Of a stretch of DNA of 64,000 nucleotides, positions 1,380 to 57,910 are shown piece after piece; the stretch's first letter is position 1, and every line of letters starts with the position of its first letter. The stretch covers positions 124,001 through 188,000 of the IMG/VR virus record IMGVR_UViG_3300030102_006934. The stretch is one strand, 5' to 3'. The notes below the pieces were generated by a model that ran no database searches, was not told where the DNA came from, and saw only the letters and a program-made list of their open reading frames with translations. Position numbers and translations under genes: made by a program.

Positions 1380-2924
1380 ATGAAAAATATAATAAAAGAA
1401 GAGTTATTAGTTAAAGTCTTATTAGAGGGTAGATTAGAAGACGTTGTTAACAAATATGCCGATAATCAAGATGATGTTGATGACATACTCTATTTTTCAA
1501 AAAACGATCCATCTGGTAATAATAAATATTTAAAATGGATGGCGAACCAATGGTTAAAACCAGTACCAACTGGTGGAGCCAATAATAAAGGGGATATAGT
1601 TTTAGTTGTTAAATCTTTCCACGAAAATCTACAAAGAATAAATAATAAAGATATTAATAGTTACAAAACTTTTGGTGAATTAAAAAAAGTAACCGATGAG
1701 GCTGAAGAAAAGAAAAAAGAGGCTGAAGAAAAGAAAGCGGTTAAAAATCAAAAAGTTGTAATTTATAATGACGATGATTGGTTGGTCGTGTCCCCATTAT
1801 CGTGGGAAGCTTCTTGTTACTACGGTGCTGGAACAAAGTGGTGTGTGGCCTCAAAACAAACTGACACCCATTGGAAAGGTTACAATAAAAGATCTACCTT
1901 TTTTTATGTGATAGATAAAAATAAAAATCAAAAAGACCCACTTTATAAAGTCGCTTACAGAATGTTAAAGGATAATAGAAGGGAGTTTTGGGATGCTGAG
2001 GATTTAGAGTTTAGTAAACAAGAAAGGGGTGAGACATGGTTCGAAAGATTACCCAAAAGAATGATAGATAATCTTAATCAATATCACATGGATAATTATC
2101 CAACACGTCCCACTGATACTGAATGGATCGATGATGATAATCGAGCACAGGCTTTAGAAAATTTACTTGGACACAGTAATATCACTCCAGTCGAAAATGA
2201 TTTATGGTACAAATTAAGAATTTATTTAGATGAAAATGATAATCAGTACTATGCTGTTGGTGATGAAGATGATATAGAAGAATCTATACAAGAATATTAC
2301 GAAATGATGGATGAAAGTGAGATATTTCAAATAATGGATCCAAGTAGTTTAGAAAGTCATATATCAATGGACGATTCAAGAGGTTACGCGGAGGAAGAAG
2401 CTACATATATGTTAGATGGCTTTGATGACCGTGAAATATGTGTAGAAAAGGGTAGAGGTTTAGACTATGATAATCTACAATCTGAAATCGAAGATTTAGA
2501 TAGTGATATAGATAGCCTTGAGTCAGACCAAAGACAATACGCAGAAACCGAAGAAGAGATAGAAGAAATAGATGAACAAATAACTGATTTGGAGATGCAG
2601 AGAGATGATAAAGAAGGTGAATTCGAACAGTTAATTGAAGACTGTAAAACAGACTATGTGGATGATAAAGCAGATGAAATAGAGTATCAAATAGACACTT
2701 ATGGTCCTGTAGATTATTTCATCAATGAACTAGGTCATTTTAAGGGTATAGCTCAAATGATGGGGGTAGGTGGTTTTTCGTTTGATCGGGATGATTGGAT
2801 TTCTAATGAGATTTTAGTATATACAACAGGTGATATGGCTTATACTATTTTTGAGGACGACTTTACCACTGAAGATGATGACGAAGGTGGCGAACATTAC
2901 CTAGGTAAAATAAGTTACCAATAA
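1380..2924 (+). CDS. YGxGTKWC-domain protein (tentatively PcfJ-like) with acidic coiled-coil C-terminus; putative head cargo
   Basis: DPSGNNKYLKWM...WLVVSPLSWEASCYYGAGTKWCVAS...YVIDK; paralogous to 33685-34425; leader MKNIIKEE..VLLE. Confidence 0.55.
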   Translation: MKNIIKEELLVKVLLEGRLEDVVNKYADNQDDVDDILYFSKNDPSGNNKYLKWMANQWLKPVPTGGANNKGDIVLVVKSFHENLQRINNKDINSYKTFGELKKVTDEAEEKKKEAEEKKAVKNQKVVIYNDDDWLVVSPLSWEASCYYGAGTKWCVASKQTDTHWKGYNKRSTFFYVIDKNKNQKDPLYKVAYRMLKDNRREFWDAEDLEFSKQERGETWFERLPKRMIDNLNQYHMDNYPTRPTDTEWIDDDNRAQALENLLGHSNITPVENDLWYKLRIYLDENDNQYYAVGDEDDIEESIQEYYEMMDESEIFQIMDPSSLESHISMDDSRGYAEEEATYMLDGFDDREICVEKGRGLDYDNLQSEIEDLDSDIDSLESDQRQYAETEEEIEEIDEQITDLEMQRDDKEGEFEQLIEDCKTDYVDDKADEIEYQIDTYGPVDYFINELGHFKGIAQMMGVGGFSFDRDDWISNEILVYTTGDMAYTIFEDDFTTEDDDEGGEHYLGKISYQ

Positions 2925-2965
2925 TCTTTCTGATTGATTAGATATTTATAAATAAAAAAAAGAAA

Positions 2966-5900
2966 ATGCCAATAAATTGCCCATTAGTATTAAGAACAAT
3001 TAAAGGTAGTAAATTAACTTTTAACGAATTAGACGGAAATTTTTTAAATCTTAGAAGTTGTTTATACCAATTAGAAAGTCAAATAACAACACAAGATAAT
3101 TTTGTAACAGGAGGTACTTATAATTCAACCACAGCATCCTTAGATTTTGATGGTACCGTTGGATTTACACCTTTCTCTGTGGATGTATCTTCATTAGATT
3201 CAGATAATAATGTTTTTGTTAATAGTGGAAACGCAAACGTTGCCACACAACAATTAACATTCACAAATACCACGGGAGGTACATTTAATGTTACCAATGC
3301 TGCAGCACTTTACAGTGATAACGATATTAATGTAACTGGTGGGACATATAACCCAACCAATGGTTGTGTCACATTTAGTACAAATAGTGGGTCAACTTTT
3401 GATATTTGTGGTTTTGTAACTGGGTTAACCGATACATTTATTACAGGTGCTACTTTAGTGGGAACTGTATTAGAATTAGAAAGAAATAATGGTTTGTCAG
3501 ATGTTACCGTAGATTTATCACCGTTAAGTGGGATAAGTGAAAATAACTTTGTAACTGGAGGTACATTTAATTCTGGTTCTGGAACACTATCATTATTTAA
3601 TAATAATGGTGATACTTTTAATGTCACTGGTTTTACTTCTGGTGGGGGTTCGGGTGGTGTTATAACTACTAAAAATATTTTACATGGTTTAATCACAAAT
3701 TTTGCGAGTGGTTCTAACCCCGAATTTGTAGATTGGTCAGGTACTTTGAGTCCGAGTGGGACTCATAATTCGTCATTACCCATTCCGTTTGATTTAACAA
3801 TAAAGCGGATAATGTTAAAATATTTAGATACTACATCAGCAAGTGTGGACGCCACTTTTAATTATGAAGTAAGTATTGGGAGGTTGTCTTCTAATACGGA
3901 TTCATCTGAAGATGTTAATTATGTAGATTATGTGGGAGGTTCAAATGTTGTAACCTTAACAAATGCAAATATAAATGGGACACATTTTTATAGTGATACA
4001 GGTGGTTTAAGTATTGATGTAAGTGCAGGAGATGTACTTGTGGTTAAAGGTGATAAGACTGCTGGTAATAATACAGGGGGATCTAACGAAGAGGTAATGG
4101 TTTCCATCGAATATGAAAAAACATATACAGGTACTGGTGGTGGAGCAGATACTTTCGTTACAGGAGCAACCCTAAATGGTACAGATCTAGAGATAGATAG
4201 AAATCATGGAGAACCACAAATTATAGTAGATTTATCACCGTTAAGTGCAAGTACAGTATATTGGGTTAAAGAAAATGATGGTTTGATAAGTGACTTTGCT
4301 AATGAAGGTGCTTTCTTGAGTTCATCTCCAGGTTCTGTAATAATGGGTGGTACACTTAATAGTAACTTCATAGATGACAGTAATAACTCAGTGATTCTTG
4401 GTTCTGTGGGTTCTAATGAAATAATTTCTGGTTCTTCTTCTACTATTATGTCTTCATTTGGTTCAGAAATAATAAACGAATCATACGCAGTAATAGTTGG
4501 TGGTACTATGAATAGTGTGAGTCGTACTAACCCTGGTGCGAATTCTACTTCCGAAGTTATCTTAGGTTCTAGTAATAGTGAAATAATAAACACTAATGGT
4601 GCTGCTATTATTGGTTTGGGTGGGGGGTTAATAGATGAGTCTTTTACGTCTAGTCTAATCGGTGGTTTTCAAAATGTCATAGATTCATCTAGTAGTTCGG
4701 TTATAGTTGGTGGTGTTATGAATAAACTAGATGGTATTAGTAGGTCAGTAATTTTAGGTGGTAATAATATTACTGGTACTACTAACGATACGGTTTATGT
4801 CCCTAATTTAAACATTGGAACTATTGGTAGTGGTACTCCATTGATAAATTTAGGATTAGATACTAATGGATTTGTTGTTACTGGAACTACGGGTAGTAGT
4901 AGTGGTGGAACAGATACTTTCGTTACAGGAGCCACCCTAAATGGTACGGATTTAGAGATAGATAGGAACAACGGACAATCTCAAATCACAGTAGACTTAA
5001 GTTCATTAGCTTCAGATAATAACGTTTTTGTTAATAGTGGAAACGCAGATTTTGCCACCCAACAATTAACATTCACAAACACTACAGGAGGTACTTTTAA
5101 CGTTACTAACGCAGCAGCACTTTACAGTGATAACGATATTAATGTAACAGGTGGTACTTATGATTTAACTACTGGGTGTGTTACATTTGGTACAAACAGT
5201 GGAACCACTTTTGATGTCTGTGGTTTCATAAGTGGTTTTACAGATACATTTACTACAGGTGGTACTTACGATAACACTACTGGTGAAATCACCTTTACTA
5301 AATCAGATAGTTCTACTTATGAGGTTGATTTGGGGGTTGTGTCTAATGTTACAGGATTTACATATTTAAATAATAATTTTACAATAAGTCAAAATAGTGG
5401 TTTACCAGATTTAGTATCAAACATTAGTGTTATGACAGGTTTAACTGTTAATGGTCAAACAACTATGTCAGGGGATAATCAAAATTTATTAAGTATAATA
5501 GGTTCTGGAGGTACGGAACCATTGTTAACAGTAGAAGGGTCCAATGGGGAACTATTTAGTATAAGTGATAATTTAACGGGTTCTTTATTTTCAGTTAGTG
5601 ATATATCTGGATTACCGATATTAGAGGTTTACGATGATGACACTGTCCATATAGGTAACTATCAAGCACCTTGTCTCAACACCACAGTAAAAACTAGTTA
5701 TAGTAGTGGACCCGCAGTAAAAACTATTTATTCCGTTCCTATAAGTGCTTACACTGGAGCTTTCTTTGATTACACAGTTTCTCACCCATTGGGTGTTAGA
5801 GCTGGTACTATAATGTCTATTTGGAGTGGTTCTACTGTTGAGTATAGGGAAAACGTTACAAACGATATAGGTTCCACAACACCATTAACACTTAGTGTCA

Positions 5901-8626: not shown

Positions 8627-10030
8627 ATGGGTGGTATTAGAAATATAAAAAATTTAGCTAAAAGGTACAAGAAAGCCAAAATATATTTTCACCAAGATTT
8701 AGATGGTGTTACCACCGCTCTAGCTATGAAAGATTATTTAAAAAATAATGGCATAGATGTCGTTGACTCTGAAGTGATACAATATGGTGATAGGGAGTTT
8801 GCCGTTAAAAAACCTTCCGCCACTGGTGATGTGATGCCTGTTTTGGTTGATTTTTCTCACGGTAAACCGATGTTCATAATACATACAGACCACCACGATA
8901 GACAAATTGGGGCAGAAGATAATACATCTAAATCTTTTAGACAAGCTCGTTCAAACGTTGAAACTATATCACAAATTGTTTCCGATAAAGAGATATTCCC
9001 CTCAGATGATATTAAAATGATTTCTACTGTAGATAGCGCTGATTTCGCTAAACTAGGAATAAAACCAGAACAACTAATGAATTATATTTTTAAGTATAAC
9101 AATGAAAAAGACCTACTTAAAAATAAAATAGCTATGGCATTAGTAACAAATAAATTACTTTTAGCTTACAAAAACAAACCTAAGTTTTTAGAGTATTTAG
9201 TTATGAACTCAACCCCAAGTATTAAAAATATTTATCTAAATATAGTTAAAATGGCTAAAGAAGATGGTTATGTATCTCCAGAAGTAATGAAGTTGAATTT
9301 ACAAAATTATATTGAGTCTCAAAGTAAAAGTGATAAGGTAAACTATGATGAGGAATTCGGTATAATATCTCAATACGGTGGTGGAGCTTTATTCAAACCA
9401 GGTTCTTATGATAGGTATGTACCCTTTAAATTGTACCCAAAAGCCAATTTTTTAGTTATAGCTTGGCCTCTAGGATTATTACAAGCTTCTTGTAACCCAT
9501 TTAAAAAAGATAGAGAACTTAAAGGTGTTAATTTAGGGGAAATAGCTGATATAGTTTTAGAAAAATTTAAAGGAGAGTTAAAAGAAAAGAAAATAACAAT
9601 AGATAGTATAAAATATTTTGCTGAAAAAAGTAAGTACTTCAATGAGGATTCAGTGGGTTTTAATTTTAAAGATATGATATCTATGTTTGATGGTTCTGAT
9701 GATGGTATTATTGGTTTAGGTCAACCACCTGAAGGTACTTCAGAAGATTACACAACAGAAAGGTGGGTAGAAGCGATAAAAAAGGTTATGTCTAAACCAT
9801 ATGACTCCTTATCAAAAAGAGAATTAAAAGCTTTAAAAATGTTATCTGTTACGGGTTGGGATATGATTAAAGCCAACAGCGGTGGTCATAAATGTATTAC
9901 CAACATATCTGGATTAACTTACTTTGGTAAGGATGGTAAGGAGTTTTTGAAAAAATTTCAATCAGAGTTTGTTGATGAACTTAAAAGTAGGATTAGAAAT
10001 AGTAAATTAAAAGAGGGAATACATACCTAG
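8627..10030 (+). CDS. DHH-family phosphoesterase
   Basis: YFHQDLDG, VLVDF, HTDHHD and C-terminal GGH motifs; late motif at 8586. Confidence 0.75.
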   Translation: MGGIRNIKNLAKRYKKAKIYFHQDLDGVTTALAMKDYLKNNGIDVVDSEVIQYGDREFAVKKPSATGDVMPVLVDFSHGKPMFIIHTDHHDRQIGAEDNTSKSFRQARSNVETISQIVSDKEIFPSDDIKMISTVDSADFAKLGIKPEQLMNYIFKYNNEKDLLKNKIAMALVTNKLLLAYKNKPKFLEYLVMNSTPSIKNIYLNIVKMAKEDGYVSPEVMKLNLQNYIESQSKSDKVNYDEEFGIISQYGGGALFKPGSYDRYVPFKLYPKANFLVIAWPLGLLQASCNPFKKDRELKGVNLGEIADIVLEKFKGELKEKKITIDSIKYFAEKSKYFNEDSVGFNFKDMISMFDGSDDGIIGLGQPPEGTSEDYTTERWVEAIKKVMSKPYDSLSKRELKALKMLSVTGWDMIKANSGGHKCITNISGLTYFGKDGKEFLKKFQSEFVDELKSRIRNSKLKEGIHT

Positions 10031-13447: not shown

Positions 13448-13777
13448 TTAAGTTCTTAAGTATGGTATAACACTAAGAACTTCCATACAAGGTGGTGATA
13501 CTTTGGAGTTACTAATAGTTTCTACCACAAAAATAGGCCCTTCTGTATGGACTATGTAATTTAATAATTTATTACTTTCACCATAATTTAGGAATTTGAC
13601 AGTAACGTCTTTGAACCCATACTCTAACAATTTTTTAGATATTAAACTTTTAACACTCTGACCCGTACAAGGTATAGTTTCTAATACTTTAGCTACTTCG
13701 GCTGCGGTTACCTCATTTATTCTAACTTCAGTTAATTTAGCCATTTGTGACTCAGTTAATCTTATAATTTTTTTCAT
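13448..13777 (-). CDS. hypothetical protein with MKKIIRLTESQ leader; putative head cargo
   Basis: leader type shared with 28592 and 34543. Confidence 0.6.
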   Translation of the reverse strand: MKKIIRLTESQMAKLTEVRINEVTAAEVAKVLETIPCTGQSVKSLISKKLLEYGFKDVTVKFLNYGESNKLLNYIVHTEGPIFVVETISNSKVSPPCMEVLSVIPYLRT

Positions 13778-13783: not shown

Positions 13784-14335
13784 TTAATTTTCGTATTCAA
13801 AGTCTAATCCACTTTGTCTTTTTTCATATTCTTCGGAATCTAAACCAGCCTCATACATCCTACCTTCTTCGAAACCTTTATTATATACAATTTCCTTTAT
13901 TTCATTAAATTCTTTTTCGGCTTGGTCTTTACCTTCTTCTTCTCCTTCTTTAAGTCCATCAGCGTAACCTTCATCGTATCCTTCATCGTGAGCGTTGAGT
14001 TTCGCATCAAGCATATCATCTTCACAGTCATCCTTTCCTTCTCTAAAACCTTCATTGTAACCCTCTCTATGACCTTCTCCCCAAGCCAACTGTTTACCAT
14101 CTTCTTGTGAGGTTTCTGCCACTTGTTTTATTATATCGGTCAATAGATTCAGTTCTTTATTTAATAAACCTAATCCATGTACTTTTTTGGCGATATGATT
14201 TAAAAACCAATTGCTGGCCCCATAGTCAGTTATAACATCAATCTTATCCTCTATTTGTTCTACACTAATAGGTTCAACATCTTTAGTCCAATCAAAATCA
14301 TTTTCTTTTAATATTTTCTTAATAGTATTTCTCAT
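13784..14335 (-). CDS. acidic protein with FliH/Yae1-like GxxxG repeats, KILKE leader and DFDWTKDV motif
   Basis: GHREGYNEGFREG, GYDEGYADGLKEG; late motif at 14344-14351 (-). Confidence 0.6.
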   Translation of the reverse strand: MRNTIKKILKENDFDWTKDVEPISVEQIEDKIDVITDYGASNWFLNHIAKKVHGLGLLNKELNLLTDIIKQVAETSQEDGKQLAWGEGHREGYNEGFREGKDDCEDDMLDAKLNAHDEGYDEGYADGLKEGEEEGKDQAEKEFNEIKEIVYNKGFEEGRMYEAGLDSEEYEKRQSGLDFEYEN

Positions 14336-25372: not shown

Positions 25373-26170
25373 ATGGATTTTGGTACGTTAAAAGATTTAT
25401 TTACTGATAAGTTAATAGAGTCTTACTCCAATAAGAATGAAGAGGGGAAAGTATTATTTAAAAAATTTATGAAAACTTTAAAGGAAAGTGAGACTTTGAG
25501 AACAGCCTTTATTGTTTATAAAAACATTGAGACTAATACAATAAAAAGTGAAATTAGGGCAAATGATTACCTAAAAGAATCCATATCTCTGTTTAATAAA
25601 TTTACTAATGATAAATCTTTAGTTTCTGAAAATAAGAAATTAATTTCTATTTTAAATGAACATGGTGTTAATTTAGATACTTTAACTAAAAAAGATTTAC
25701 ACAGTAATTTAGAAATAGTTTTATCAACAGATTTAAAAGCATCTACGTTAAATAAAATAGAAGAAAGTAAATCTAAGCTAATTGAGTGGTTGATGTCTGA
25801 AAAAAAACCTACTATAGTGGATGATAGTAAGGATTATGTAAAAGAAGGTATCGATACCCAAAAGTTTTTGGAAATAGTTACTAATAAGTTTAATGAAAAA
25901 TATTCTGACCTAACAAAACAAGAGAAGAGTATTTTAAAAGTTTTACGTGAGAATAACACCCAAGAGGGAAAAGAGGTAATAAATACTTTAGTTAAAGAGA
26001 CTATAAGTATTATAAATACTAAAATAAACTCTCACAAAGACAACATTAATATAAAAGAAAAGTTACTTGAAACCAAAGATTTGATTTACTCCATGTTGGA
26101 AGATACTGAGAGTTTAAATAAAAATATATTAAAGTTGTATGATTTGAAAAATAATCTAAAAGATGAATAA
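25373..26170 (+). CDS. hypothetical helical head-module protein
   Basis: follows portal; late motif at 25349; many LxE sites. Confidence 0.55.
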   Translation: MDFGTLKDLFTDKLIESYSNKNEEGKVLFKKFMKTLKESETLRTAFIVYKNIETNTIKSEIRANDYLKESISLFNKFTNDKSLVSENKKLISILNEHGVNLDTLTKKDLHSNLEIVLSTDLKASTLNKIEESKSKLIEWLMSEKKPTIVDDSKDYVKEGIDTQKFLEIVTNKFNEKYSDLTKQEKSILKVLRENNTQEGKEVINTLVKETISIINTKINSHKDNINIKEKLLETKDLIYSMLEDTESLNKNILKLYDLKNNLKDE

Positions 26171-27746: not shown

Positions 27747-28478
27747 ATGAAAATATTAAAACCAGGAGAAGAAGGATATGGATATCTTGTAGAATATGAT
27801 TCAGGGTTCATATCTTCTGAACTAACTTGTCAAGATGGAGTTTGTTCTAACCATAACCTAATAAAAGAGTTTAAATCGGGATTAAGTTTAGGTCAAGATG
27901 GTACATTACCAGATAAAATAGAAATTTATGCCGTACTACAAAAGTGGGGTGTAGAGAACAAGAATGGGAGGGTATACCCAGAAGAGATTTTGAAAAGAGA
28001 ATCTAAGAGATATCAAGAGTTTATAGATATGGGTACGTCTTTGGGGGAATTAAACCACCCAGAGTCTTCAATTATTGATGCTGACAGAGTTTCACATATG
28101 ATTTCAGAGATTTGGTGGAACGGTAGAACACTTATGGGAAAAATGGAGTTAGATACAACACCAGGTTACCTTAAATCAGGTATTATCTCATCTGTAGGTG
28201 ATAAAGTATTAAATATGATTAGGAAGGGTTGGACCGTTGGTATTTCATCTAGAGGAGTAGGTTCTTTAAAGAATGAAAATGGTAAAAATATTGTACAGGA
28301 GGATTTCGAATTAATTTGTTGGGATATAGTTACTTCTCCATCAACACCAGGTTCTTGGATATCTACCTCGGAAAAAGATTTAAAACCTTTCATGGAGTCT
28401 ACCAAAGGGGATAAAACAAAATTAATAATAGAAGATGACTCTGACTTATTAGATAGTTTAGATAAATTTTTATTGTAA
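27747..28478 (+). CDS. prohead core protease (T4 gp21-like)
   Basis: ENKNGRVYP, LGELNHP, VSH, GISSRGVGSL, WDIVTSPSTPG. Confidence 0.95.
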   Translation: MKILKPGEEGYGYLVEYDSGFISSELTCQDGVCSNHNLIKEFKSGLSLGQDGTLPDKIEIYAVLQKWGVENKNGRVYPEEILKRESKRYQEFIDMGTSLGELNHPESSIIDADRVSHMISEIWWNGRTLMGKMELDTTPGYLKSGIISSVGDKVLNMIRKGWTVGISSRGVGSLKNENGKNIVQEDFELICWDIVTSPSTPGSWISTSEKDLKPFMESTKGDKTKLIIEDDSDLLDSLDKFLL

Positions 28479-28491
28479 TTAAAAAAAAATC

Positions 28492-28579: not shown

Positions 28580-28591
28580 AATTAAAAAAAA

Positions 28592-28915
28592 ATGAAAATG
28601 AAAAAAAGAATTGTAAAATTAAACGAATCTGACTTAGAGTTATTAGTCAAAAAAATTATTAGAGAAGAAGAAATGGATCCTAACTCATCTGATGAAGGTG
28701 GTGAAGAAGAGACGGATAACCCAAAAGATGTTGAGATGTTCTTAGACGCTATGAAAAAGTATTTTATGGACAAATACCCAAGGTTCGCTAATAAAATAAA
28801 TACTAGAAAAGAAAAAGCGATGTTGTTAGCTGCCTTAGCTGAAGAATTGGGTGTAGATACTAATTTGATTAATATGGCTAAAGGAGAATTGAAGAAAGCT
28901 GGTTTAGGCAAGTAA
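28592..28915 (+). CDS. hypothetical protein with IVKLNESDL..KKIIREE leader; putative head cargo
   Basis: leader nearly identical to that of 34543. Confidence 0.6.
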   Translation: MKMKKRIVKLNESDLELLVKKIIREEEMDPNSSDEGGEEETDNPKDVEMFLDAMKKYFMDKYPRFANKINTRKEKAMLLAALAEELGVDTNLINMAKGELKKAGLGK

Positions 28916-28916
28916 T

Positions 28917-29438
28917 ATGAATATCCGTAAAATCATAAAAGAAGAACTCCTTAAAGAGGTTGGTGGTTATGATGATTTAAGTGTTATGGGTCAACATGCT
29001 GGAGCTAGTATGGGAGTATTAACTAGTAGTTACCAAATTTTAATAGATCTATTAACAGATATAGCAAACTCACTTTTAGATAGTGAAAAAGGTTATAGTA
29101 AATTCTCTTTATCTAATTCAGTTATAGGTGATTTAGACAAAGTTACATCTGTAGTGATTAGTGATACTGAAAAAATTTTACAGGATTTTACGGAAGACGA
29201 TGTTATAAAAGAAGGTAAAAGATTTATTGCCCACCTTAAATCATTAGTAAAAAGAATTAGGTTAATATCTAACATGGTTTCTACTTACACAAAATCTGAA
29301 TACGAAGAAGAACTAAGAAAATTAGTGATGGAGTTTTTACCTAAAGCTAAAAAATATGGTGATACTTTGATAAAAAGTAATAACATGTTTAAAGGTAGAT
29401 TTTCTAGAGCAACTGGAGGAAATACTTTTTTCAATTAA
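28917..29438 (+). CDS. hypothetical protein with MNIRKIIKEELLKE leader; putative head cargo
   Basis: leader matches those of 1380 and 35503. Confidence 0.6.
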   Translation: MNIRKIIKEELLKEVGGYDDLSVMGQHAGASMGVLTSSYQILIDLLTDIANSLLDSEKGYSKFSLSNSVIGDLDKVTSVVISDTEKILQDFTEDDVIKEGKRFIAHLKSLVKRIRLISNMVSTYTKSEYEEELRKLVMEFLPKAKKYGDTLIKSNNMFKGRFSRATGGNTFFN

Positions 29439-29767: not shown

Positions 29768-29797
29768 AAAAGACTCAGAAATGGGTCTTTTTTTTTT
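29768..29797 (+). terminator. intrinsic terminator, probably bidirectional
   Basis: AAAAGACTCA-gaaa-TGGGTCTTTT then T-run. Confidence 0.8.
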
Positions 29798-30337: not shown

Positions 30338-31576
30338 ATGGCAAATGAAAGAAAGTCTATCATCGATGAAGCCCTTTTAGAAAGCGCTCAAATTGAGAAA
30401 GCTTTTGAAGCCAACGCAAAAGAAATACTGACTCGTACAATGAGTTCAGAAATTGAAGAAATGGTAAAGGAATCTTTAGAAGGTTCGATTGGTTTAACGG
30501 AGGATGAAGATGAAGAGAAAGATGAGTTAGAGTTAGATCTAGAATTAGGTGACTCTGATGAAATGGATGCCAGCGGTGCTGGTGAAGAAGTTGACCTAGA
30601 AATGGGTGAACTAGAAATGGATGATGAACCAATGGATGGTGAAATCGAAATGGATGATGTTGAAAGTATTGACTTAACAACAACAGAAATGCCTGAAGTA
30701 ATTAACGTATTCAAGAAAATGAGTGACGATGATGAAATAGAGGTTGTAACTGATGGTGGTAATGTTGAGATTAAAGACACAGAAACTGGTGCTGAGTACA
30801 GAATAGAACTTGGTGGTGAAGAAAGTGAAATGGAGGACATGGAAGCAGATATGGTTGACATGGAACCAGAAATGGGAGATATGGACCCTATGGAACTTGA
30901 TAACGAAGATGAGTCTGAAGAAGAAGAAGTCGAATACCAAGTGGTACTAGATGATGAAGATGAAGATGATGAAGATGGAATGGAAGACGAAATGTCTGGA
31001 GGTGATTACATGGATGACATGGAAGAGGGTAAATCCCCAAGAACACTTTCTAAGGCAAGTAAGCAACCTAATAGAAAATCTGCTGATATCAATAGTAATC
31101 GTATGAAAATGGGTGAGTCTAAAAAACCAAAGTTCTTAAAATTAATTAACGAAAACAAAGATCTTAAAAATAAAGTAGGTTCTATCACTAGTGAAAATGA
31201 AACATTAAAAGAAGACTACAACAAAATGGTTGATGCTTTAAAACAATTTAGAGATAAACTTAATGAAGTAGCCGTTTTCAATAGTAATTTAACTTATTCA
31301 GTTAGATTGTTCACAGAGAACACAACTACAAAAGAAGAAAAATTAGAAATAATCAAGAGATTTGATGACGTTAAAACTTTGAAGGAATCTAAAGCTACCT
31401 ATAAAGGTTTAGTAAAAGAGATTTCTAAAAAAGAACCTATCAAAGAATCTGTTGAGGAAAAATTAAATGAAACTAAAACAAGTGGTTCATCAACAGAAAT
31501 TAATGAATCACAAGTGTATGTTAATCCAGAGTTAGAAAAAATGAAGAAACTTTGGGATTACCAATATAAGCACTAA
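30338..31576 (+). CDS. prohead scaffold/core protein (gp22-like)
   Basis: acidic region plus coiled coil, immediately upstream of the MCP; many (I/L)xE sites. Confidence 0.8.
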   Translation: MANERKSIIDEALLESAQIEKAFEANAKEILTRTMSSEIEEMVKESLEGSIGLTEDEDEEKDELELDLELGDSDEMDASGAGEEVDLEMGELEMDDEPMDGEIEMDDVESIDLTTTEMPEVINVFKKMSDDDEIEVVTDGGNVEIKDTETGAEYRIELGGEESEMEDMEADMVDMEPEMGDMDPMELDNEDESEEEEVEYQVVLDDEDEDDEDGMEDEMSGGDYMDDMEEGKSPRTLSKASKQPNRKSADINSNRMKMGESKKPKFLKLINENKDLKNKVGSITSENETLKEDYNKMVDALKQFRDKLNEVAVFNSNLTYSVRLFTENTTTKEEKLEIIKRFDDVKTLKESKATYKGLVKEISKKEPIKESVEEKLNETKTSGSSTEINESQVYVNPELEKMKKLWDYQYKH

Positions 31577-31603: not shown

Positions 31604-33406
31604 ATGGGATATTTATTAAAATCAGGAGAAGTTGGTAACATCGGACTTAAGCACCAAAAAGCTGTTCGTGAAGCGACTGTCTCTAAATGGAATGACTTAG
31701 GGTTCTTAGAAGGACTTAATGGTCACACAAGAGAAAACATTGCTTTGTTATATGAAAACACTGCATCTTCTCTAATTAGCGAAACTACTGACGCGGGGAA
31801 CTCTGGTTCTTTCGAAACTGTAGTTTTCCCAATCGTTAGAAGAGTATTTTCTAAATTATTAGCTAACGATATCGTATCTGTACAAGCTATGAACTTACCA
31901 ATCGGTAAATTGTTCTACTTCGTACCTAAAACATCTGACAGAATTTTCGAAAATGGATGGCCAGCATCAGGTGGTACAGCAAAACATGGTGAACCAATCG
32001 TTACTACTTGTTTAACAGGTGGTGACTGTGACCCAACTACTTACTCTGAATGTGCTAAAAATCTATATGATAGATTCTACAATGACGGAATGTTTGACCA
32101 ATCAAAAGGTAAAATTACTGTTGTTGCGACTAACGCTGACCCAGTTGTTTGGACGGCTTGTACTGACGGTCAAGCTGGTAATGAATTTACTGGTGGTGTT
32201 TCTGCATTTGCTGGTGACGGTTCGGTTAGAACTCAAATCCTTAAAATGTGTGAATTCAATGACGCTGGAGCTGGTAGATTAACTGGTCCTAACGGAAACG
32301 AAATGGATACTGAGGAATTCTTAGCATCTTTAATGGTTACTGTTGATGGTCCTATCGTTGATAAAGATAACCAAGTTATTTTTGAATCTGGTGACCAAGT
32401 ACCAGTAAGAGTTGTTACTCAAAAATACGGAAGAGGTATCGTTGATTACGGTGATATCTGTGACGCTGATGGATGTATATACTTAGAGGCTGATTTAACT
32501 CACCCAGTATGTGCAACTTGTGAAAGTGGTACTTTAGATGGTTACATCGGAGCTACTTCTGGAACAACAGCTATCGTTCCTGGTGTTGCTTCAACTGACT
32601 TAGGTGGAACTAACTTCGTAGTTACTTTCAGACAGTACGCAAACTTAGAACTTGAATCTCAAATGGGAGAAGTTTCTTTCGAATTAGAATCTGTAACTGT
32701 TTCTGTAACAGAAAGAAAACTAAGAGCTACTTGGACTCCTGAGTTAGCACAAGATGTATCAGCATTCCATAACATTGATGCTGAAGCTGAATTAACAGCA
32801 TTATTATCTGAACAAGTTGCGGCGGAAATTGACCGTGAAATCTTAAGAGACTTAAGAACAGGTGCGGCTTGGACATTAAGATGGGATTATGACGGATGGA
32901 AGAGATTACCTTCTGGTCAAGCTGCTTACACTCAAAAAGATTGGAACCAGACTTTGATTACGGCAATCAACCAAATTTCAGCACAAATCCATAAGTCTAC
33001 TTTAAGAGGTGGGGCTAACTTTATCGTGGTTTCTTCTGAGGTATCAGCTATTTTTGATGACTTAGAGTACTTCCACGTATCTAACGCTTCTCCAGAACAA
33101 GATAACTATAACATGGGTATTGAGAGAGTAGGTTCTTTATCAGGTAGATATACTGTATATAGAGACCCATACGCTCCAGCTAACACCGTGTTACTTGGAC
33201 ATAAAGGTCAATCATTATTGGATACTGGGTACATTTACGCACCTTACGTTCCATTACAATTGACACCTACAATGTATAACCCATTCAACTTCGTACCTGT
33301 TAAAGGTATCATGACTCGTTACGCTAAGAAAATGGTTAATAACCGTTTCTACGGAACAATCAACGTTGATGGTATTCGTACATTTGATGTTAGAGAATTA
33401 AGATAA
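31604..33406 (+). CDS. major capsid protein (T4 gp23-like)
   Basis: PIVRRVF..LLANDIVSVQAM..P.G, RKLRATWTPELAQD..AFHNIDAEAEL, YAPYVPL, GIMTRY; likely cleavage at LISE|T. Confidence 0.96.
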   Translation: MGYLLKSGEVGNIGLKHQKAVREATVSKWNDLGFLEGLNGHTRENIALLYENTASSLISETTDAGNSGSFETVVFPIVRRVFSKLLANDIVSVQAMNLPIGKLFYFVPKTSDRIFENGWPASGGTAKHGEPIVTTCLTGGDCDPTTYSECAKNLYDRFYNDGMFDQSKGKITVVATNADPVVWTACTDGQAGNEFTGGVSAFAGDGSVRTQILKMCEFNDAGAGRLTGPNGNEMDTEEFLASLMVTVDGPIVDKDNQVIFESGDQVPVRVVTQKYGRGIVDYGDICDADGCIYLEADLTHPVCATCESGTLDGYIGATSGTTAIVPGVASTDLGGTNFVVTFRQYANLELESQMGEVSFELESVTVSVTERKLRATWTPELAQDVSAFHNIDAEAELTALLSEQVAAEIDREILRDLRTGAAWTLRWDYDGWKRLPSGQAAYTQKDWNQTLITAINQISAQIHKSTLRGGANFIVVSSEVSAIFDDLEYFHVSNASPEQDNYNMGIERVGSLSGRYTVYRDPYAPANTVLLGHKGQSLLDTGYIYAPYVPLQLTPTMYNPFNFVPVKGIMTRYAKKMVNNRFYGTINVDGIRTFDVRELR

Positions 33407-34485: not shown

Positions 34486-34542
34486 CATTTTATTAAAAAT
34501 TTTTATAAAAACTTAGATATTTATATAAAAAACAAATTTGTA

Positions 34543-34950
34543 ATGAAAAAAGTAATAAAAATAAACGAGTCTCAATTAGAGTACCTAGTTAAGAAAGTTA
34601 TAAAAGAAGAAGAAAAAGAAACTAAAAAAACTACAGTAACTAAACATCCAGCTTATCCAGCCGTGGATAAATTAGAAAGAGCTTTAGAAGATTTAAAGAT
34701 GGAGTTTAAAGATAGTATTGCTAATGCAGTATCTGGTTCTGATGGTTATCACAGTGAAATAGATAAGTTTTCTGAAGATTTTGGTAAATTTATTACTAAG
34801 GTTTCTAAAATGAAAAGTAAAATCAATGATTATCAAATAGCGAATAAAGATAAGGAGGTGGCTGAAGCTAAGAAACGGAAAGAAAAACAGCGTCAGTACC
34901 AAAATTATATGAGAGAAAAGGCTAGAAATGAAGGTCGTAACTATTATTAA
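34543..34950 (+). CDS. hypothetical protein with VIKINESQL..KKVIKEE leader; putative head cargo
   Basis: late motif at 34517; leader shared with 28592. Confidence 0.6.
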   Translation: MKKVIKINESQLEYLVKKVIKEEEKETKKTTVTKHPAYPAVDKLERALEDLKMEFKDSIANAVSGSDGYHSEIDKFSEDFGKFITKVSKMKSKINDYQIANKDKEVAEAKKRKEKQRQYQNYMREKARNEGRNYY

Positions 34951-34961: not shown

Positions 34962-35501
34962 ATGAGAAGATTTGACAAAAGAAATATTATTACAGAAGCT
35001 AATCAAAGATTAGAAAGAGAATACATAAAAAGTAAAACACTTATAAAAGAAGATATTTTAGAATTAAAACAAATGTCTAAACAAATCTATTCTTACCTAA
35101 AAAAGAAAGGTTACGAGGTTAAAATGAAAACTGAAAAAGGTGAGTCTAGAAAGTCTTTTGATACTAATTTAGATTTAAATGATACTATTCAGTTAGTGAT
35201 ACAAGAAGGAACTGAAGTAGTCATGATAGCTTTACCAGTTCGTGCTGTCGTTAAGAAGTTAACCGGTGATAAGGACCTTAATTCAAGTACGGAAGCTGAT
35301 AAATACGGTAAAGATTTTCAAGATTGGTATGTAAATAAAGAGGTGACTAACTACGTTGATAAATTAGGTGATGAATTAGTTTCACAGTTAAAATCTAAAT
35401 ACCCAACTATGAGACATGGTTTTGATAAAGATGATTCTAGAATGTTTTATTTTATGAGATTTGGTTACGGTAGAAATAAAAAGGGTGGTGATATAAAATA
35501 A
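34962..35501 (+). CDS. hypothetical protein with MRRxDKR..I.EANQRLE leader
   Basis: leader shared with 35791 and 36255. Confidence 0.65.
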   Translation: MRRFDKRNIITEANQRLEREYIKSKTLIKEDILELKQMSKQIYSYLKKKGYEVKMKTEKGESRKSFDTNLDLNDTIQLVIQEGTEVVMIALPVRAVVKKLTGDKDLNSSTEADKYGKDFQDWYVNKEVTNYVDKLGDELVSQLKSKYPTMRHGFDKDDSRMFYFMRFGYGRNKKGGDIK

Positions 35502-35502: not shown

Positions 35503-35781
35503 GTGAGAAACTTAATCCGTAAAATATTAAAAGAAGAATCAGATAAGCAAACTGATTTAGCCAACTCTAATAGTACTGAACGTAATATATGTGATGATTT
35601 TAGTGTTGATACTTACGAGGAATTGATTGATTTGATTAATAAAGCACACGTCTCAAAAGAAGATGACCCAAAAATAGAAAAATTACTAATTCAGTTGAAG
35701 AAGGATAATGACCGATTGGGTAATGATTTGGATAACTTAAACACCTATCAACATAAGATAGCTAATTTACTGTGTAAATAA
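35503..35781 (+). CDS. hypothetical protein with MRNLIRKILKEE leader (GTG start)
   Basis: leader shared with 14335 and 30200. Confidence 0.6.
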   Translation: MRNLIRKILKEESDKQTDLANSNSTERNICDDFSVDTYEELIDLINKAHVSKEDDPKIEKLLIQLKKDNDRLGNDLDNLNTYQHKIANLLCK

Positions 35782-35790: not shown

Positions 35791-36249
35791 ATGAGAAGAC
35801 AGGATAAAAGAATGGTTATTAAGGAAGCTAATCAAAGATTAGAATTAAACCATGTTTTAAAAACAAAACATTTCTTAACAGAAGAAGAAATACAAAATTT
35901 AGATGAGGGTATCAAAGATTGGATAGCTAAAGGTTTAATAGCCATTACATTATTGGGTGGGGGTATGAAATTATACCACATGGACCAACAAGCAGCACAA
36001 GATAAACATGATAGGACTGAGTATTATGAAAAAGCTTTAAAAGACCAAGTGACTAAAACAGAGACTAGGGACTTAGCTAAGTTAGGTTTAGAGATAAATA
36101 AAGAAACTAATAAAGTTAAATTAGCTTACGGTACTTCATCCGAAGATGCTGATGGATTGTTTAAGTCTTACGCTGAGTCTTACATGAAACAACACCCACA
36201 TGAATTTGGTATTGGTACTGACGGTACTATCTATTGGTTACAAAAGTAA
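35791..36249 (+). CDS. hypothetical protein with MRRxDKR leader and one hydrophobic helix
   Basis: MRRQDKRMVIKEANQRLE; WIAKGLIAITLLGGGM. Confidence 0.65.
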   Translation: MRRQDKRMVIKEANQRLELNHVLKTKHFLTEEEIQNLDEGIKDWIAKGLIAITLLGGGMKLYHMDQQAAQDKHDRTEYYEKALKDQVTKTETRDLAKLGLEINKETNKVKLAYGTSSEDADGLFKSYAESYMKQHPHEFGIGTDGTIYWLQK

Positions 36250-36254: not shown

Positions 36255-37241
36255 ATGAGAAGGTATGATAAGCGAAGGAATATTATGGAATCTAACTTAA
36301 GGTTAGAGAGGGAATTTATTGCCAGTAAATCTATAACAGTAAATGATTTTATTTTAGAAAATATATCCGAAAGTCAATATATTTCTATGTTAAAAGAATC
36401 ATGTGATGAGCTAGGGATAGAATACGATAATCAACTTAATGAAGAAAGGGGTTTAATAACTGAAGAAGGCTTTACTTTAATGGCAATAAGTGCGGCGTTA
36501 GCGTCTGGTAAATTGTTCGATTTAATTGGTTCATTTTTTAGAAAAGCTTGGAATTTTATTAGTAAACAAATAGCTAAAAAAAGTAAAACATGCAAAGAGG
36601 TATCAAAGGATGAAAGAGGTAAGTGTGCTGAAGCTTTGTTAGCTTCAGGTAAAGGCCCTAAAATTTTAGGTAAGACTTGGTTTGAAAAGGCTGGTGAGTG
36701 GATACATGAAAATATAATAATGACTTTATTTAGGGTTGTCGCTATTGTTTTGTTAGATACCGCACAAGGGATTTTTAGTTCTGGTAAAAAATCTGATGAA
36801 GTACAACAAGACTATTACGGTGGGCCGAAAGGTACCTTTATTGAGGGTGGTAAGTGGGTTGATGATGATAAATTAGTCGATATGGTTGCAAATACTTTAT
36901 TTTATGCAACAATTACTATTGTTGGTTATTTTGGCTTAAAAGAACTATATGCTCTTGGAAAGGATGGTATTGCCACTTTTACTGGTGTAGTAGAGATTGT
37001 TACTTCGGTAACTAAAGGTTATGAATTAATATTACTAGTTATAGCAACAGTAGTAATAAAAAGAGGTTTAGTTAAGTCTTCAGACACTTCTGGTGTTGCT
37101 CATACATTGGGTGAGTGTTTAGAGGGTGGTGGTAAAATAGGTAAAATATTTAAACAGGTAAAAAAGATGAAAAAGGATGATAGTTATAGTCAGGAGGTTC
37201 TAGCTTGTTTAAATAAAAGTTTAGAATTAGCTCATCATTAA
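36255..37241 (+). CDS. hypothetical protein with MRRxDKR leader and several hydrophobic helices (start 36255)
   Basis: MRRYDKRRNIMESNLRLE; FTLMAISAALA, LFRVVAIVLL, LFYATITIVGYFG, LILLVIATVVI. Confidence 0.65.
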   Translation: MRRYDKRRNIMESNLRLEREFIASKSITVNDFILENISESQYISMLKESCDELGIEYDNQLNEERGLITEEGFTLMAISAALASGKLFDLIGSFFRKAWNFISKQIAKKSKTCKEVSKDERGKCAEALLASGKGPKILGKTWFEKAGEWIHENIIMTLFRVVAIVLLDTAQGIFSSGKKSDEVQQDYYGGPKGTFIEGGKWVDDDKLVDMVANTLFYATITIVGYFGLKELYALGKDGIATFTGVVEIVTSVTKGYELILLVIATVVIKRGLVKSSDTSGVAHTLGECLEGGGKIGKIFKQVKKMKKDDSYSQEVLACLNKSLELAHH

Positions 37242-57541: not shown

Positions 57542-57544
57542 AAT

Positions 57545-57910
57545 TTAAAATTGTGTTATTTTATAAACTCTACTCATACTTTTATCACCTTCTGGATTAA
57601 AAAGTTCTCTAGGTTGGTTAAAAGTACCACCAAGAATTCTGAACCCATTTATCCTATCAGTTCTAAATGTTTTCCAACCAGGTTGTATTGTTTTTGTATC
57701 ACCGCCTAATTGATATACTCTTATAATGTCGTTATCTACTAATGAAGAGCCGTAACAATAAACTTCTACCCATCTTTGTCCTTTTCCACCAGGATCTTCT
57801 TCATCGTCATAACGTAAAGTAACGATTCTACGTTTGTTCATCGCTTCCTCTATTTCATTCTTATTAGCAACCTCTAATATAAGGTCTTTAAATAAAGAGT
57901 AAAGTTTCAT
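57545..57910 (-). CDS. stand-alone WYL-like protein with MKLYSLFKDLILE leader (start 57910)
   Basis: IEEAM..RRIVTLRY...R.VEVYCYG....RVYQ...WKTFRTDRI. Confidence 0.7.
   Translation of the reverse strand: MKLYSLFKDLILEVANKNEIEEAMNKRRIVTLRYDDEEDPGGKGQRWVEVYCYGSSLVDNDIIRVYQLGGDTKTIQPGWKTFRTDRINGFRILGGTFNQPRELFNPEGDKSMSRVYKITQF

What the first reader, a model, noticed from the sequence alone, without database searches (positions are those of the whole stretch)
1380..57910. Candidate tag-and-cleave system: unrelated late proteins share short N-terminal leaders ending in (I/L)xE
Seen: at least 12 otherwise unrelated ORFs start with one of three leader classes. Class A: MKNIIKEE (1380), MRNTIKKILKE (14335-), MNIRKIIKEELLKE (28917), MRSLIKKVLRE (30200-), MRNLIRKILKEE (35503) and, more loosely, MKLYSLFKDLILE (57910-). 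Class B: MKKIIRLTESQ (13777-), KRIVKLNESDLELLVKKIIREE (28592) and KKVIKINESQLEYLVKKVIKEE (34543). Class C: MRRxDKR..I.E (34962, 35791, 36255). Most lie behind the ATATTTAT late motif, and the replication and glycosylation enzymes lack such leaders. Known: T4 gp21 cleaves after (I/L)-x-E, and T4 internal proteins carry a ~10-aa capsid-targeting sequence that it removes. Inference: a modular address tag loads a varied arsenal (SprT-like protease, WYL, YGxGTKWC domain, membrane proteins) into the head for injection with the DNA.
Basis: partly seen in the sequence, partly recalled or inferred. Interest (0 to 1): 0.8.

Follow-up and report, generated by a model that had tools for sequence, protein, structure and literature searches.

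The report
Head-loading leader peptides in a jumbo phage
A giant T4-like phage, and hundreds of uncultured relatives, put the same few short N-terminal leaders ending in hydrophobic-x-Glu on many unrelated proteins, most likely as cleavable tags that load them into the phage head as in T4, but this has not been shown at the protein level.

Summary
Eleven ORFs in the window (a twelfth only loosely) have unrelated bodies but share N-terminal leaders. Classes A and B are one family: core [LI][IV][KR]K[IV][IL][KR]E, with B carrying an added MKKxI+LTESxL. Class C is MRRxDK..I..AN..LE.

The same leaders recur in 80 related loci. More than 120 IMG/VR stretches match the class B DNA pattern, against 2 in 596 Gb of cellular genomes. 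A class B profile finds 6,797 protein clusters.

Orthologous bodies swap leader classes. In one family the leader is 0, 7, 16 or 22 residues long, and the leaderless window protein starts exactly after the leader's Glu. Codon use shows selection on the peptide, not the DNA.

The phage encodes a T4 gp21-type S77 prohead protease with the catalytic His and Ser conserved. The predicted capsid maturation site ([VLIT][KR]E|N, placed as in T4 gp23) and the scaffold and core proteins use the same triplet.

Best reading (about 0.6): T4-style capsid targeting sequences, in new and multi-class form. Cleavage, packaging and injection remain untested. This is a new variant of a known kind.

The parts
27747..28478 (+). 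Prohead maturation protease, Peptidase_S77 (T4 gp21 type). This is the presumed enzyme that removes the leaders.
   Evidence: Pfam PF03420 at 3.1e-28 (99 bits, cut-off 27). phrog_207 at 1e-41. 36% identity to T4 gp21, with LNHP (His) and ISSRG (Ser) aligned to the T4 residues that read Ala in the PDB 5JBL chain.
1380..2924 (+). 514-aa acidic protein with a short class A leader, MKNIIKEE (nt 1380-1403), and a YGAGTKWC motif. It is a paralogue of 33685-34425.
   Evidence: ATATTTAT lies 9 nt upstream.
13784..14335 (-). 183-aa very acidic protein with class A leader MRNTIKKILKE| (nt 14303-14335).
   Evidence: ATATTTAT lies 8 nt upstream.
13448..13777 (-). 109-aa protein with class B leader MKKIIRLTESQMAKLTEVRINE| (nt 13712-13777).
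   Evidence: It lies downstream of 13784-14335 in the same late unit.
28592..28915 (+). 107-aa protein directly after the protease gene, with class B leader ..KRIVKLNESDLELLVKKIIRE| (nt 28592-28666). It may be a prohead-core component.
28917..29438 (+). 173-aa protein with class A leader MNIRKIIKEE|LLKE| (nt 28917-28958). An orthologue in L143 carries a class B leader instead.
29796..30200 (-). 134-aa mini Zn-metalloprotease (SprT-like / minigluzincin-like, HELIH at residue 98) with class A leader MRSLIKKVLRE| (nt 30168-30200).
   Evidence: Pfam SprT-like at 6e-5, below its cut-off. 171 homologues were found; all 120 examined have HExxH, and many carry PF10263. In the AF2 model the leader is helix 2-11 with pLDDT below 50, followed by a linker, and the body starts at residue 20. 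The best fold match is selecase.
34543..34950 (+). 135-aa protein with class B leader MKKVIKINESQLEYLVKKVIKE| (nt 34543-34608). The L001 orthologue carries a class C-like leader.
   Evidence: ATATTTAT lies 18 nt upstream.
34962..35501 (+). 179-aa protein with class C leader MRRFDKRNIITEANQRLERE (nt 34962-35021). The L001 orthologue carries a class D leader (..MMERLESPRLT..).
35503..35781 (+). 92-aa protein (GTG start) with class A leader MRNLIRKILKE| (nt 35503-35535).
35791..36249 (+). 152-aa protein with class C leader MRRQDKRMVIKEANQRLE (nt 35791-35844).
36255..37241 (+). 328-aa protein with class C leader MRRYDKRRNIMESNLRLERE (nt 36255-36314). The body has a hydrophobic segment near residue 255.
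57545..57910 (-). 121-aa protein with a loose leader-like N-terminus, MKLYSLFKDLILE|. This is a weak member.
   Evidence: WYL is only at E = 0.0086. It is not recovered by the PSSM.
31604..33406 (+). Major capsid protein. The predicted propeptide is residues 1-44 (nt 31604-31735), ending GHTRE|N.
   Evidence: phrog_138 at 1e-65. E44 is invariant in all MCP N-termini recovered from the 80 relatives, within GH[VLIT..][KR]E|N. It lies 29 residues before the V..VRR motif, exactly as T4 gp23 Ala66 lies before its own.
30338..31576 (+). Candidate scaffold protein (gp22 position, directly upstream of the MCP gene). It has a hyper-acidic centre and 9 [ILVM][KRN]E sites.
   Evidence: Position and composition. 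Triplet enrichment z = 3.55, third highest in the window. There is no family match, so the role is inferred.
25373..26170 (+). Conserved 265-aa protein directly after the portal gene; candidate prohead-core protein. It has 14 [ILVM]xE sites, including SILKVLRE|N.
   Evidence: z = 3.1 and 3.7. It belongs to a family of 56 in relatives.
733..756 (+). Internal perfect class A core TIKKILKE|D at residues 171-178 of ORF 223-1344. This may be an internal processing site or a fused module.
   Evidence: it is the only internal 8-mer of 17,591 that reaches the seed scores.
8627..10030 (+). DHH/DHHA1 phosphoesterase without a leader. Its orthologues in relatives carry 7-, 16- or 22-aa leaders that end exactly where this protein begins.
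   Evidence: DHH and GGGH motifs are invariant. The AF2 model matches PggH, DhhP and RecJ.
34517..34524 (+). One example of the ATATTTAT late-promoter-like motif. Others lie at 1363, 14344(-), 30208(-), 27724, 25349, 23417 and 21267.

Best explanation
The leaders are capsid targeting sequences of the T4 kind. They are short, helical, basic-amphipathic N-terminal propeptides made from late transcripts. They bind a component of the scaffolding core while the prohead assembles, so the attached protein is enclosed in the head. The gp21-type S77 protease (27747-28478) then cuts after the terminal Glu (P3 = I/L/V, P2 often K/R/N). This frees the mature protein inside the head, and some of these proteins then leave with the DNA at infection.

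Shown here:
- the tag exists, is modular and is selected as a peptide;
- it always ends in hydrophobic-x-Glu;
- an intact S77 protease is present;
- the predicted MCP site and the scaffold and core candidates use the same triplet;
- the tagged genes lie in late-promoter units.

Inferred:
- binding to the core;
- cleavage;
- residence in the virion;
- ejection.

Some tagged proteins (28592, 28917) may be core building blocks rather than ejected effectors.
For: 1. Non-random, N-terminal only, on unrelated bodies.

2. Modularity. Orthologous bodies carry different leaders: window 34543 has class B and L001_14134 class C-like. Window 34962 has class C and L001_14575 class D. One family in the relatives has short A or long B leaders. 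Body 28917 has class A or, in L143, class B.

3. Boundary. In the DHH family the leader is 0, 7, 16 or 22 aa long and always ends ..[IK][KT]E|[SGT]G[IL]R. The leaderless window protein starts at P1'.

4. All 97 class B leaders have [ILVMF]xE ending at residues 16-30 (61 of them at residue 22), against 22 of 97 in a control segment. All 93 SprT-like orthologues have such a site ending within residues 6-20.

5. The parts of class B that the search pattern did not fix are nevertheless conserved.

6. Codon identity at identical residues is 0.505, against 0.520 expected from the bodies' codon usage, so the peptide rather than the DNA is selected.

7. S77 protease with the catalytic His and Ser. All characterised S77 proteases cut after Glu (PMC5694885). 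T4 sites read from NC_000866 include FLTE|A (gp23) and LLRE|S (gp24). Others are LIKE|E (gp67) and MKTYQEFIAE|A (IPII/IPIII).

8. An invariant [VLIT][KR]E|N in the MCP sits at the position equivalent to the T4 gp23 cleavage site. [ILVM][KRN]E is most enriched in the adaptor-like, post-portal core and scaffold proteins.

9. In the AF2 model the leader is an isolated low-confidence helix ending at E11, followed by a linker and then the folded body.

10. The tag is virus-specific: more than 120 IMG/VR stretches against 2 in 596 Gb of bacterial and archaeal genomes.

11. Late-promoter context, and absence from the sugar/replication block.

12. The T4 literature describes exactly this logic (PMC9026906; PMC3012670).
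Against: - There is no proteomic, structural or genetic evidence for this phage or any relative.
- The protease's P3 and P2 preferences are not known.
- The strict T4 motif [IL]xE is not significantly enriched in the scaffold candidate. The enrichment appears only with the broader, post hoc [ILVM][KRN]E.
- In class C the Glu at residue 12 of the window copies is not conserved in relatives, so its cleavage point is uncertain.
- Several leader classes coexist in one genome, which needs either a tolerant receptor or several receptors.
- Elsewhere in the same genome the leaders sit on ordinary-looking cytoplasmic enzymes (NUDIX, P-loop kinase). These need not be virion proteins.
- Some tagged bodies are very acidic, unlike the basic T4 internal proteins.
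- Only 51 of 120 class B loci show a recognisable homologue of a window gene within the stretch fetched. Linkage to an S77 protease is therefore unproven for the rest.
Confidence: 0.6

Rival explanations
1. The leader is an uncleaved common N-terminal helix that docks many proteins onto one shared partner other than the prohead core. Candidates are the phage's ClpA/ClpB-like AAA+ protein (10359-12824), a replication or assembly factory, or the membrane surface. The terminal Glu would then be part of the helix rather than a cleavage site.
For: The leader is a helical amphipathic segment detached from the body. A phage-encoded Clp-type ATPase lies next to two leader genes and is syntenic in 7 class B loci. 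Tagged bodies include cytoplasmic-type enzymes.
Against: This does not explain why every leader ends in hydrophobic-x-Glu (97 of 97 and 93 of 93). It does not explain why the leaderless orthologue begins exactly after that Glu. It also does not explain why the same triplet marks the MCP maturation site and is enriched in scaffold and core proteins.
Confidence: 0.15
2. The leader is an instability or timing tag (an N-terminal degron or protease-recognition element) that limits the lifetime or activity of late accessory proteins, with no role in packaging.
For: The tag is short, transferable and N-terminal. Both a protease and a Clp-type ATPase are encoded.
Against: S77 proteases are only known to act inside proheads (PMC9026906). 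The tag is concentrated in and around the head module. No ClpP-type peptidase was seen in the window.
Confidence: 0.07
3. The shared gene starts are recombination linkers. On this view, conserved sequence at the 5' ends of cassettes lets phages swap accessory genes by homologous recombination, and the peptide itself has no function.
For: Leader genes occur in tandem arrays in variable regions. Orthologous bodies carry different leaders.
Against: There is no excess nucleotide conservation: synonymous codons are used as in the gene bodies (0.505 against 0.520). Conservation follows amino-acid properties (I/V/L, K/R).
Confidence: 0.04
4. The pattern is a by-product of composition or translation initiation. 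On this view, AT-rich genomes favour Lys, Ile and Asn codons after the start codon, which gives look-alike N-termini.
For: K, R and I are 1.5-1.6x enriched in residues 2-15 of all window genes.
Against: Composition-matched shuffles of N-termini give 1.0 +/- 1.0 hits against 32 observed. The 12-residue class B pattern is essentially absent from 185,579 bacterial and archaeal genomes. Residues 13-22, which the pattern did not fix, are also conserved.
Confidence: 0.02
5. The leader is an export or membrane-targeting signal that sends the proteins out of the cytoplasm of the infected cell.
For: It is N-terminal and begins with basic residues. One tagged body (36255) has a hydrophobic segment.
Against: There is no hydrophobic core: the leaders are charged throughout. 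The pattern is absent from host-type genomes. Most bodies have a maximum 19-residue Kyte-Doolittle hydropathy below 1.4.
Confidence: 0.03

Closest known systems
T4 capsid targeting sequence (CTS) of the internal proteins IPI, IPII and IPIII and of Alt, removed by gp21
   Same: A short N-terminal propeptide on otherwise unrelated proteins. It starts MK.. and ends (I/L)-x-E. The phage has an S77 protease in a portal-protease-scaffold-MCP module, and the genes are late. The cargo set is polymorphic between related phages (PMC9026906, PMC3012670; T4 sequences).
   Different: There is no sequence similarity to MKTYQEFIAE. The leaders here are basic (K/R-rich) and come in at least five classes. Their length ranges from 7 to 26-30 aa, including a two-part form (LTESxL plus core). 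They tag far more families: 11-12 genes in 64 kb, dozens of body families in 80 loci, and 6,797 protein clusters for class B alone. Function is untested here.
Propeptides of head and ejection proteins in giant phages phiKZ, 201phi2-1 and SPN3US (S77 homologues gp175 and gp245)
   Same: A large phage with a diverged S77 protease that cuts after Glu at a three-residue motif. N-terminal propeptides are thought to target proteins to the prohead. Paralogues share identical N-termini (PMC5694885).
   Different: Those propeptides are mostly longer than 100 aa, the motif is (A/S/G)-x-E, and no short consensus tag shared by unrelated proteins has been described. This phage's MCP and protease are closer to T4 and to Flavobacterium phage immuto.
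Encapsulin cargo-loading peptides
   Same: A short transferable terminal peptide that directs diverse enzymes into an HK97-fold shell.
   Different: These are usually C-terminal, are not removed by a protease, bind the shell protein rather than a scaffold, and belong to a cellular nanocompartment rather than a virion. This comparison rests on general knowledge and was not tested here.
Phage P1 Dar (defence against restriction) head proteins
   Same: Anti-defence proteins are packaged in the head and ejected with the DNA. Incorporation depends on N-terminal regions and on other head proteins (PMC9024508 and PMC12810830, from their abstracts and titles only).
   Different: No short consensus tag, and no S77 protease logic.

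Membership tests
T4-type capsid targeting sequence (CTS) system | A short N-terminal peptide shared by otherwise unrelated phage proteins | tested here: met
T4-type capsid targeting sequence (CTS) system | The peptide ends in the prohead-protease site (hydrophobic-x-Glu) | tested here: met
   97 of 97 class B leaders and 93 of 93 SprT-like orthologues. The leaderless orthologue starts at P1'. Class C is less clear.
T4-type capsid targeting sequence (CTS) system | The genome encodes a gp21-type (S77) prohead protease with catalytic His and Ser | tested here: met
T4-type capsid targeting sequence (CTS) system | The peptide is removed from the protein found in mature virions | not testable with these tools
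   Needs virion N-terminomics. No cultured isolate of this clade with proteomics was found.
T4-type capsid targeting sequence (CTS) system | The peptide is necessary and sufficient for incorporation into the prohead | not testable with these tools
   Needs leader-reporter fusions in a cultured phage.
T4-type capsid targeting sequence (CTS) system | Late expression together with head genes | tested here: inconclusive
   The ATATTTAT motif precedes head genes and 4 leader genes, and the others lie in the same units. The motif's role as a late promoter is inferred, and there are no transcript data.
T4-type capsid targeting sequence (CTS) system | Sequence homology to the T4 CTS (MKT[YF][QK]EF..) | tested here: not met
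   T4 IPI, IPII and IPIII N-termini share only the initial MK and the terminal (I/L)xE with the leaders here. The system is therefore analogous rather than homologous at the tag level.
Peptidase S77 (for 27747-28478) | Profile match above the curated cut-off, and catalytic residues present | tested here: met
   99.1 bits against a cut-off of 27. His and Ser align with T4 gp21 and with PDB 5JBL.
SprT-like / minigluzincin metallopeptidase (for 29796-30200) | HExxH plus a third ligand, and a family profile or fold match | tested here: inconclusive
   HELIH is present in 120 of 120 homologues, with an invariant downstream EH. The window protein scores 23.3 bits against a cut-off of 25.6. Many homologues carry PF10263. 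The best fold match is selecase at E = 5.5e-3 and TM 0.46-0.58.
Sec / lipoprotein / Tat signal peptide | A hydrophobic core of 10-20 residues after a basic N-region | tested here: not met
   The leaders are charged throughout and are absent from cellular genomes.

The most novel reading that the evidence does not exclude
The leaders are a general, multi-class 'cargo code' of a large uncultured clade of aquatic T4-like, often jumbo, phages. Any protein that carries one of a handful of N-terminal tags is loaded into the prohead and trimmed after Glu, so the packaged or ejected proteome can be read from sequence alone. That proteome would be unusually large and enzymatic: a mini-metalloprotease, a DHH phosphodiesterase, a NUDIX hydrolase, a P-loop kinase, a GNAT acetyltransferase, acidic possible DNA mimics, and thousands of families of unknown function. 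It would act as a pre-loaded counter-defence and takeover kit, exchanged between phages by swapping tag and cassette.
Probability: 0.4. Interest if true: 0.75.

Novelty: new variant of a known kind. Interest (0 to 1): 0.6.

Why it matters
If the leaders work as T4's CTS does, they give a sequence-only way to pick out virion-internal and probably ejected proteins in uncultured phages. Almost all such genes are currently of unknown function. Class B alone marks 6,797 protein clusters, and Pfam has no model for it. That would point experimenters to first-minute effectors, including candidate anti-defence enzymes. It would show that the CTS principle extends far beyond the T-even phages, in a richer multi-tag form. 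It would also supply new short tags for loading foreign proteins into phage heads in Bacteroidota-type systems.

Tried and rejected
- tblastn with a 24-aa and a 27-aa leader against 50,697 GenBank phage genomes. Result: nothing, or only an uncultured 484-kb phage and a chance hit. The query is too short, and no cultured phage with a near-identical leader exists.
- Full-text search for the leader strings (LTESEL and similar). Only unrelated hits came back.
- Search for virion proteomics of flavobacterial T4-like phages. Nothing usable was found.
- PHROGs and Pfam on the tagged bodies. Results were mostly empty.
- ESM Atlas look-alikes for 1380 and 36255. Only viral hypothetical proteins came back.
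- Genomic context of two leader-bearing database proteins. No Pfam annotation was present, although L206 showed classes B, C and E side by side.
- Strict [IL]xE enrichment in the scaffold candidate. It is not significant. Only the broader [ILVM][KRN]E is enriched, and that is a post hoc choice.
- The first candidate MCP site (AVRE|A at residue 23) was rejected, because the Glu is not conserved in relatives. The site at residue 44 was kept.
- Paralogy as the explanation for the class C trio was rejected, because the bodies fall in separate families.
- Clustering of the bodies of the top 150 profile hits was confounded by proteins with several leader copies, so it was not used.

Full report
**What the window is.** The window has about 31% G+C and encodes a T4-like head module:
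- large terminase, 21279-23126;
- portal, 23459-25342;
- Peptidase_S77 prohead protease, 27747-28478;
- major capsid protein (MCP), 31604-33406.

The MCP is only 42-44% identical to its nearest GenBank relatives. These are an uncultured 484-kb phage, Microcystis phage Mel-JY01 and Flavobacterium phage immuto. One of the window's own proteins lies on a 380,343-bp contig. IMG/VR contig 3300030102_006934 has the same length and carries two class C matches 829 nt apart, the same spacing as window genes 34962 and 35791. The window is therefore part of a jumbo phage. More than 598 related MCP loci exist in IMG/VR, and 80 of them were fetched.

**Checking the observation.** Three corrections apply:
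- 35503 starts with GTG.
- 57910 is a loose match only.
- Class B is class A with an N-terminal extension.

The shared core is [LIT][IV][KR]K[IV][IL][KR]E. With the leaders removed, the twelve bodies show no BLASTP similarity.

The statistical tests were:
- Leave-one-out PSSM: each left-out copy scores 12.8-15.4 bits. No other N-terminus in the window exceeds 10.7 bits. Only one of 17,591 internal 8-mers reaches such scores.
- The window-derived PSSM on the 80 independent loci: 32 N-terminal hits at 12 bits or more, against 1.0 +/- 1.0 in composition-matched shuffles, and a density 19 times that of internal positions.
- A model-free comparison of 10-mers between different body families: 151 high-scoring N-terminal pairs against 5 for an internal control segment.

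**Leader classes.** Clustering the cross-family N-terminal similarities recovers five classes:

| Class | Form | Body families |
|---|---|---|
| A/B | core, with or without the MKKxI+LTESxL extension | 27 |
| C | M[RK][RK]xDK...I..AN...E..YL | 9 |
| D | ..MMERLESPR[LM]T.. | 2-3 |
| E | ..E[DE]E[KR]xRILNLHExATKxQYLxE | 6 |
| F | ..M[KR]YLxGYxRGVVISEQ | 3 |

Classes B, C and E also sit side by side on an unrelated contig. Another part of the window's own genome carries two further class C genes. One of them bears an AAA_33 P-loop domain that starts at residue 41. The same stretch has a class A-like MKYFIRKRLLEE fused to a NUDIX domain that starts at residue 21.

**The leader is a discrete, exchangeable module.** Orthologous bodies carry different leaders:
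- window 34543 has class B, and L001_14134 has a class C-like leader;
- window 34962 has class C, and L001_14575 has class D;
- one family in the relatives has either the 13-aa short form or the 22-aa long form;
- the 28917 body has class A in the window and class B in L143.

The clearest case is the DHH phosphoesterase family of window gene 8627-10030. The window protein begins M|GGIRNIKNL. Its orthologues begin as follows:
- MKRIIKE|SGLRNI (7 aa);
- MKIIITESQYKMLIKE|SGIRD (16 aa);
- MKKIVKLTESELTQVIKRMITE|SGIRD (22 aa).

The leaderless form thus starts exactly one residue after the leader's terminal Glu.

In the AlphaFold2 model of the SprT-like protein, the leader is a low-confidence helix spanning residues 2-11. 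It ends at E11, is followed by a linker, and the confident fold starts at residue 20.

**The tag is selected as a peptide and is virus-specific.** The same pattern found only 2 stretches, both in MAGs, in 596 Gb from 185,579 bacterial and archaeal species.

In 104 unique copies, the residues that the pattern did not fix are nevertheless conserved:
- position 15 is L, I, V or M in 100 of 104;
- position 16 is I or V in 101 of 104;
- position 22 is E in 73 of 104, and most of the rest are a longer subtype with E at position 26.

All 97 usable copies have [ILVMF]xE ending at residues 16-30, against 22 of 97 in a control segment of the same proteins. Where two copies share the same residue, they use the same codon 50.5% of the time. 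The bodies' codon usage predicts 52.0%. There is therefore no selection at the nucleotide level.

A profile of the first 30 residues finds 6,797 representatives of 50%-identity clusters at E of 0.001 or less. Pfam has no model covering the leader, and no paper in the searchable library prints it.

**Link to the protease.** The protein at 27747-28478 is 36% identical to T4 gp21. Its His (LNHP) and Ser (ISSRG) align with the T4 residues that read Ala in the PDB 5JBL chain. Every characterised member of this protease family cuts after Glu at a three-residue motif (PMC5694885).

T4 sites read directly from NC_000866 are:
- FLTE|A in gp23 (residue 65);
- MAKINELLRE|S in gp24 (residue 10);
- LIKE|E in gp67;
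- MKTYQEFIAE|A in IPII and IPIII.

The leaders here end ..ILKE|E, ..VLRE|A and ..RLTE|S.

In the MCP, a Glu at residue 44 within GH[VLIT][KR]E|N is invariant across the relatives. It lies 29 residues before the V..VRR motif, exactly as T4 gp23 Ala66 lies before its own motif.

The triplet [ILVM][KRN]E is most enriched in three window proteins. These are the adaptor-like protein at 62363, the conserved post-portal protein at 25373 and the scaffold candidate at 30338. This motif definition was chosen after seeing the leaders. The strict [IL]xE is not significantly enriched in the scaffold candidate.

**Expression context.** ATATTTAT occurs 30 times against 17.3 +/- 4.7 expected. It lies 4-34 nt upstream of the terminase, portal, protease and other structural genes, and of four leader genes. 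The other eight leader genes follow in the same units. None of the 19 genes in the 43.4-57.5 kb block has a leader or the motif (Fisher p = 0.021). That the motif is a late promoter is an inference from which genes it precedes.

**What is tagged.** Most bodies have no known family. The recognisable ones are:
- a 134-aa Zn-metalloprotease with HELIH (29796-30200). It has 171 homologues, many with PF10263, and its best fold match is selecase;
- in relatives, the DHH/DHHA1 phosphodiesterase, whose fold matches PggH, DhhP, NrnA and RecJ and whose DHH and GGGH motifs are invariant;
- single examples of HD, PG_binding_1, GNAT and endolysin-like domains;
- NUDIX and AAA_33 domains elsewhere in this genome.

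The bodies of 13784 and 1380 are strongly acidic. Genes 28592 and 28917 sit between the protease and scaffold genes, which is where T4 keeps prohead-core proteins.

**Interpretation.** The best-supported reading is a capsid-targeting-sequence system of the T4 kind (PMC9026906; PMC3012670), realised with different, more numerous and partly longer tags. I put it at about 0.6, because cleavage, packaging and ejection are all inferred. The rivals are:
- an uncleaved docking helix, for example for the phage's Clp-type AAA+ protein;
- a degron or timing tag;
- recombination linkers;
- a compositional artefact;
- an export signal.

Each rival fails to explain at least one of four findings: the universal terminal Glu, the start of the leaderless orthologue, the match to the MCP site, or the codon and genome-scan controls.

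**Novelty.** The principle is textbook for T-even phages, so this is a new variant of a known kind and not a new category. Four things appear to be undescribed:
- the tags themselves;
- their multiplicity and nesting (7 to 26 aa);
- their spread over thousands of protein clusters in uncultured aquatic phages;
- the enzymatic nature of some cargo.

Noticed in passing
window 223-1344 (residues 171-178; nt 733-756): A perfect class A core, TIKKILKE|D, lies in the middle of a 373-aa ORF with a TTG start. It is the only internal 8-mer of 17,591 that scores like the N-terminal copies. It could be an internal processing site or a fusion of two modules.
   Followed up: partly
Proteins P0121, P0122, P0125, P0126, P0139 and P0262: 44 of the top 150 profile hits carry 2-3 copies of the class B leader, and 15 of the 54 internal copies are still preceded by an MKK-type start. 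They may be fused tandem leader genes or polyproteins, or gene calls that read through a stop codon.
   Followed up: partly
window 8627-10030: A DHH/DHHA1 phosphoesterase (the fold resembles the pGpG/c-di-NMP phosphodiesterases and RecJ) that has no leader here but is leader-tagged in relatives. A packaged nucleotide-signal phosphodiesterase would be a candidate anti-defence enzyme.
   Followed up: partly
window 10359-12824 (-): An 821-aa ClpA/ClpB-type AAA+ protein (phrog_4871, E = 7e-263) encoded by the phage, next to two leader genes. No ClpP-type peptidase was seen in the window.
   Followed up: no
window 28480-28590: A terminator-like hairpin (AGATCTAAATTTAGATC followed by a T run) lies right after the protease stop codon. 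It is followed by a relatively G+C-rich direct repeat, AAGCAGCTTAAGCA x2, before gene 28592 (fold z-score -2.35).
   Followed up: partly
It has no ATATTTAT motif and no leaders. It was not annotated here.
   Followed up: no
L282 6536-9007 (same 380-kb contig, outside the window): There are more tagged genes in this genome. Two are tandem class C genes, one bearing an AAA_33 P-loop domain. A third is MKYFIRKRLLEE fused to a NUDIX hydrolase. In both domain-bearing proteins the Pfam domain starts just after the leader.
   Followed up: partly
L202 (Flavobacterium phage immuto 2-6A, record 106971-148500): This cultured phage has an S77 protease and analogous but different N-termini (MKKSQLRQIIKE|A, MKKQILSEQFRRMQKLAGIITE|S, ..NIIKEILSE|K, ..NAQLLKE|G). 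It is a practical system for testing the hypothesis.
   Followed up: partly
window 33685-34425 (-) and 1380-2924: These are paralogues that share an NKYL..M / YGAGTKWC-type domain (phrog_28193 and phrog_17056, function unknown). Only the longer copy carries a leader, and the short copy is conserved next to the MCP gene in relatives.
   Followed up: no
window 36255: Another database starts this protein at residue 11, so the leader is missed there. Automated gene calls may therefore often truncate leaders.
   Followed up: no
window 1-64000: ARAGORN found no tRNA genes in the window.
   Followed up: yes
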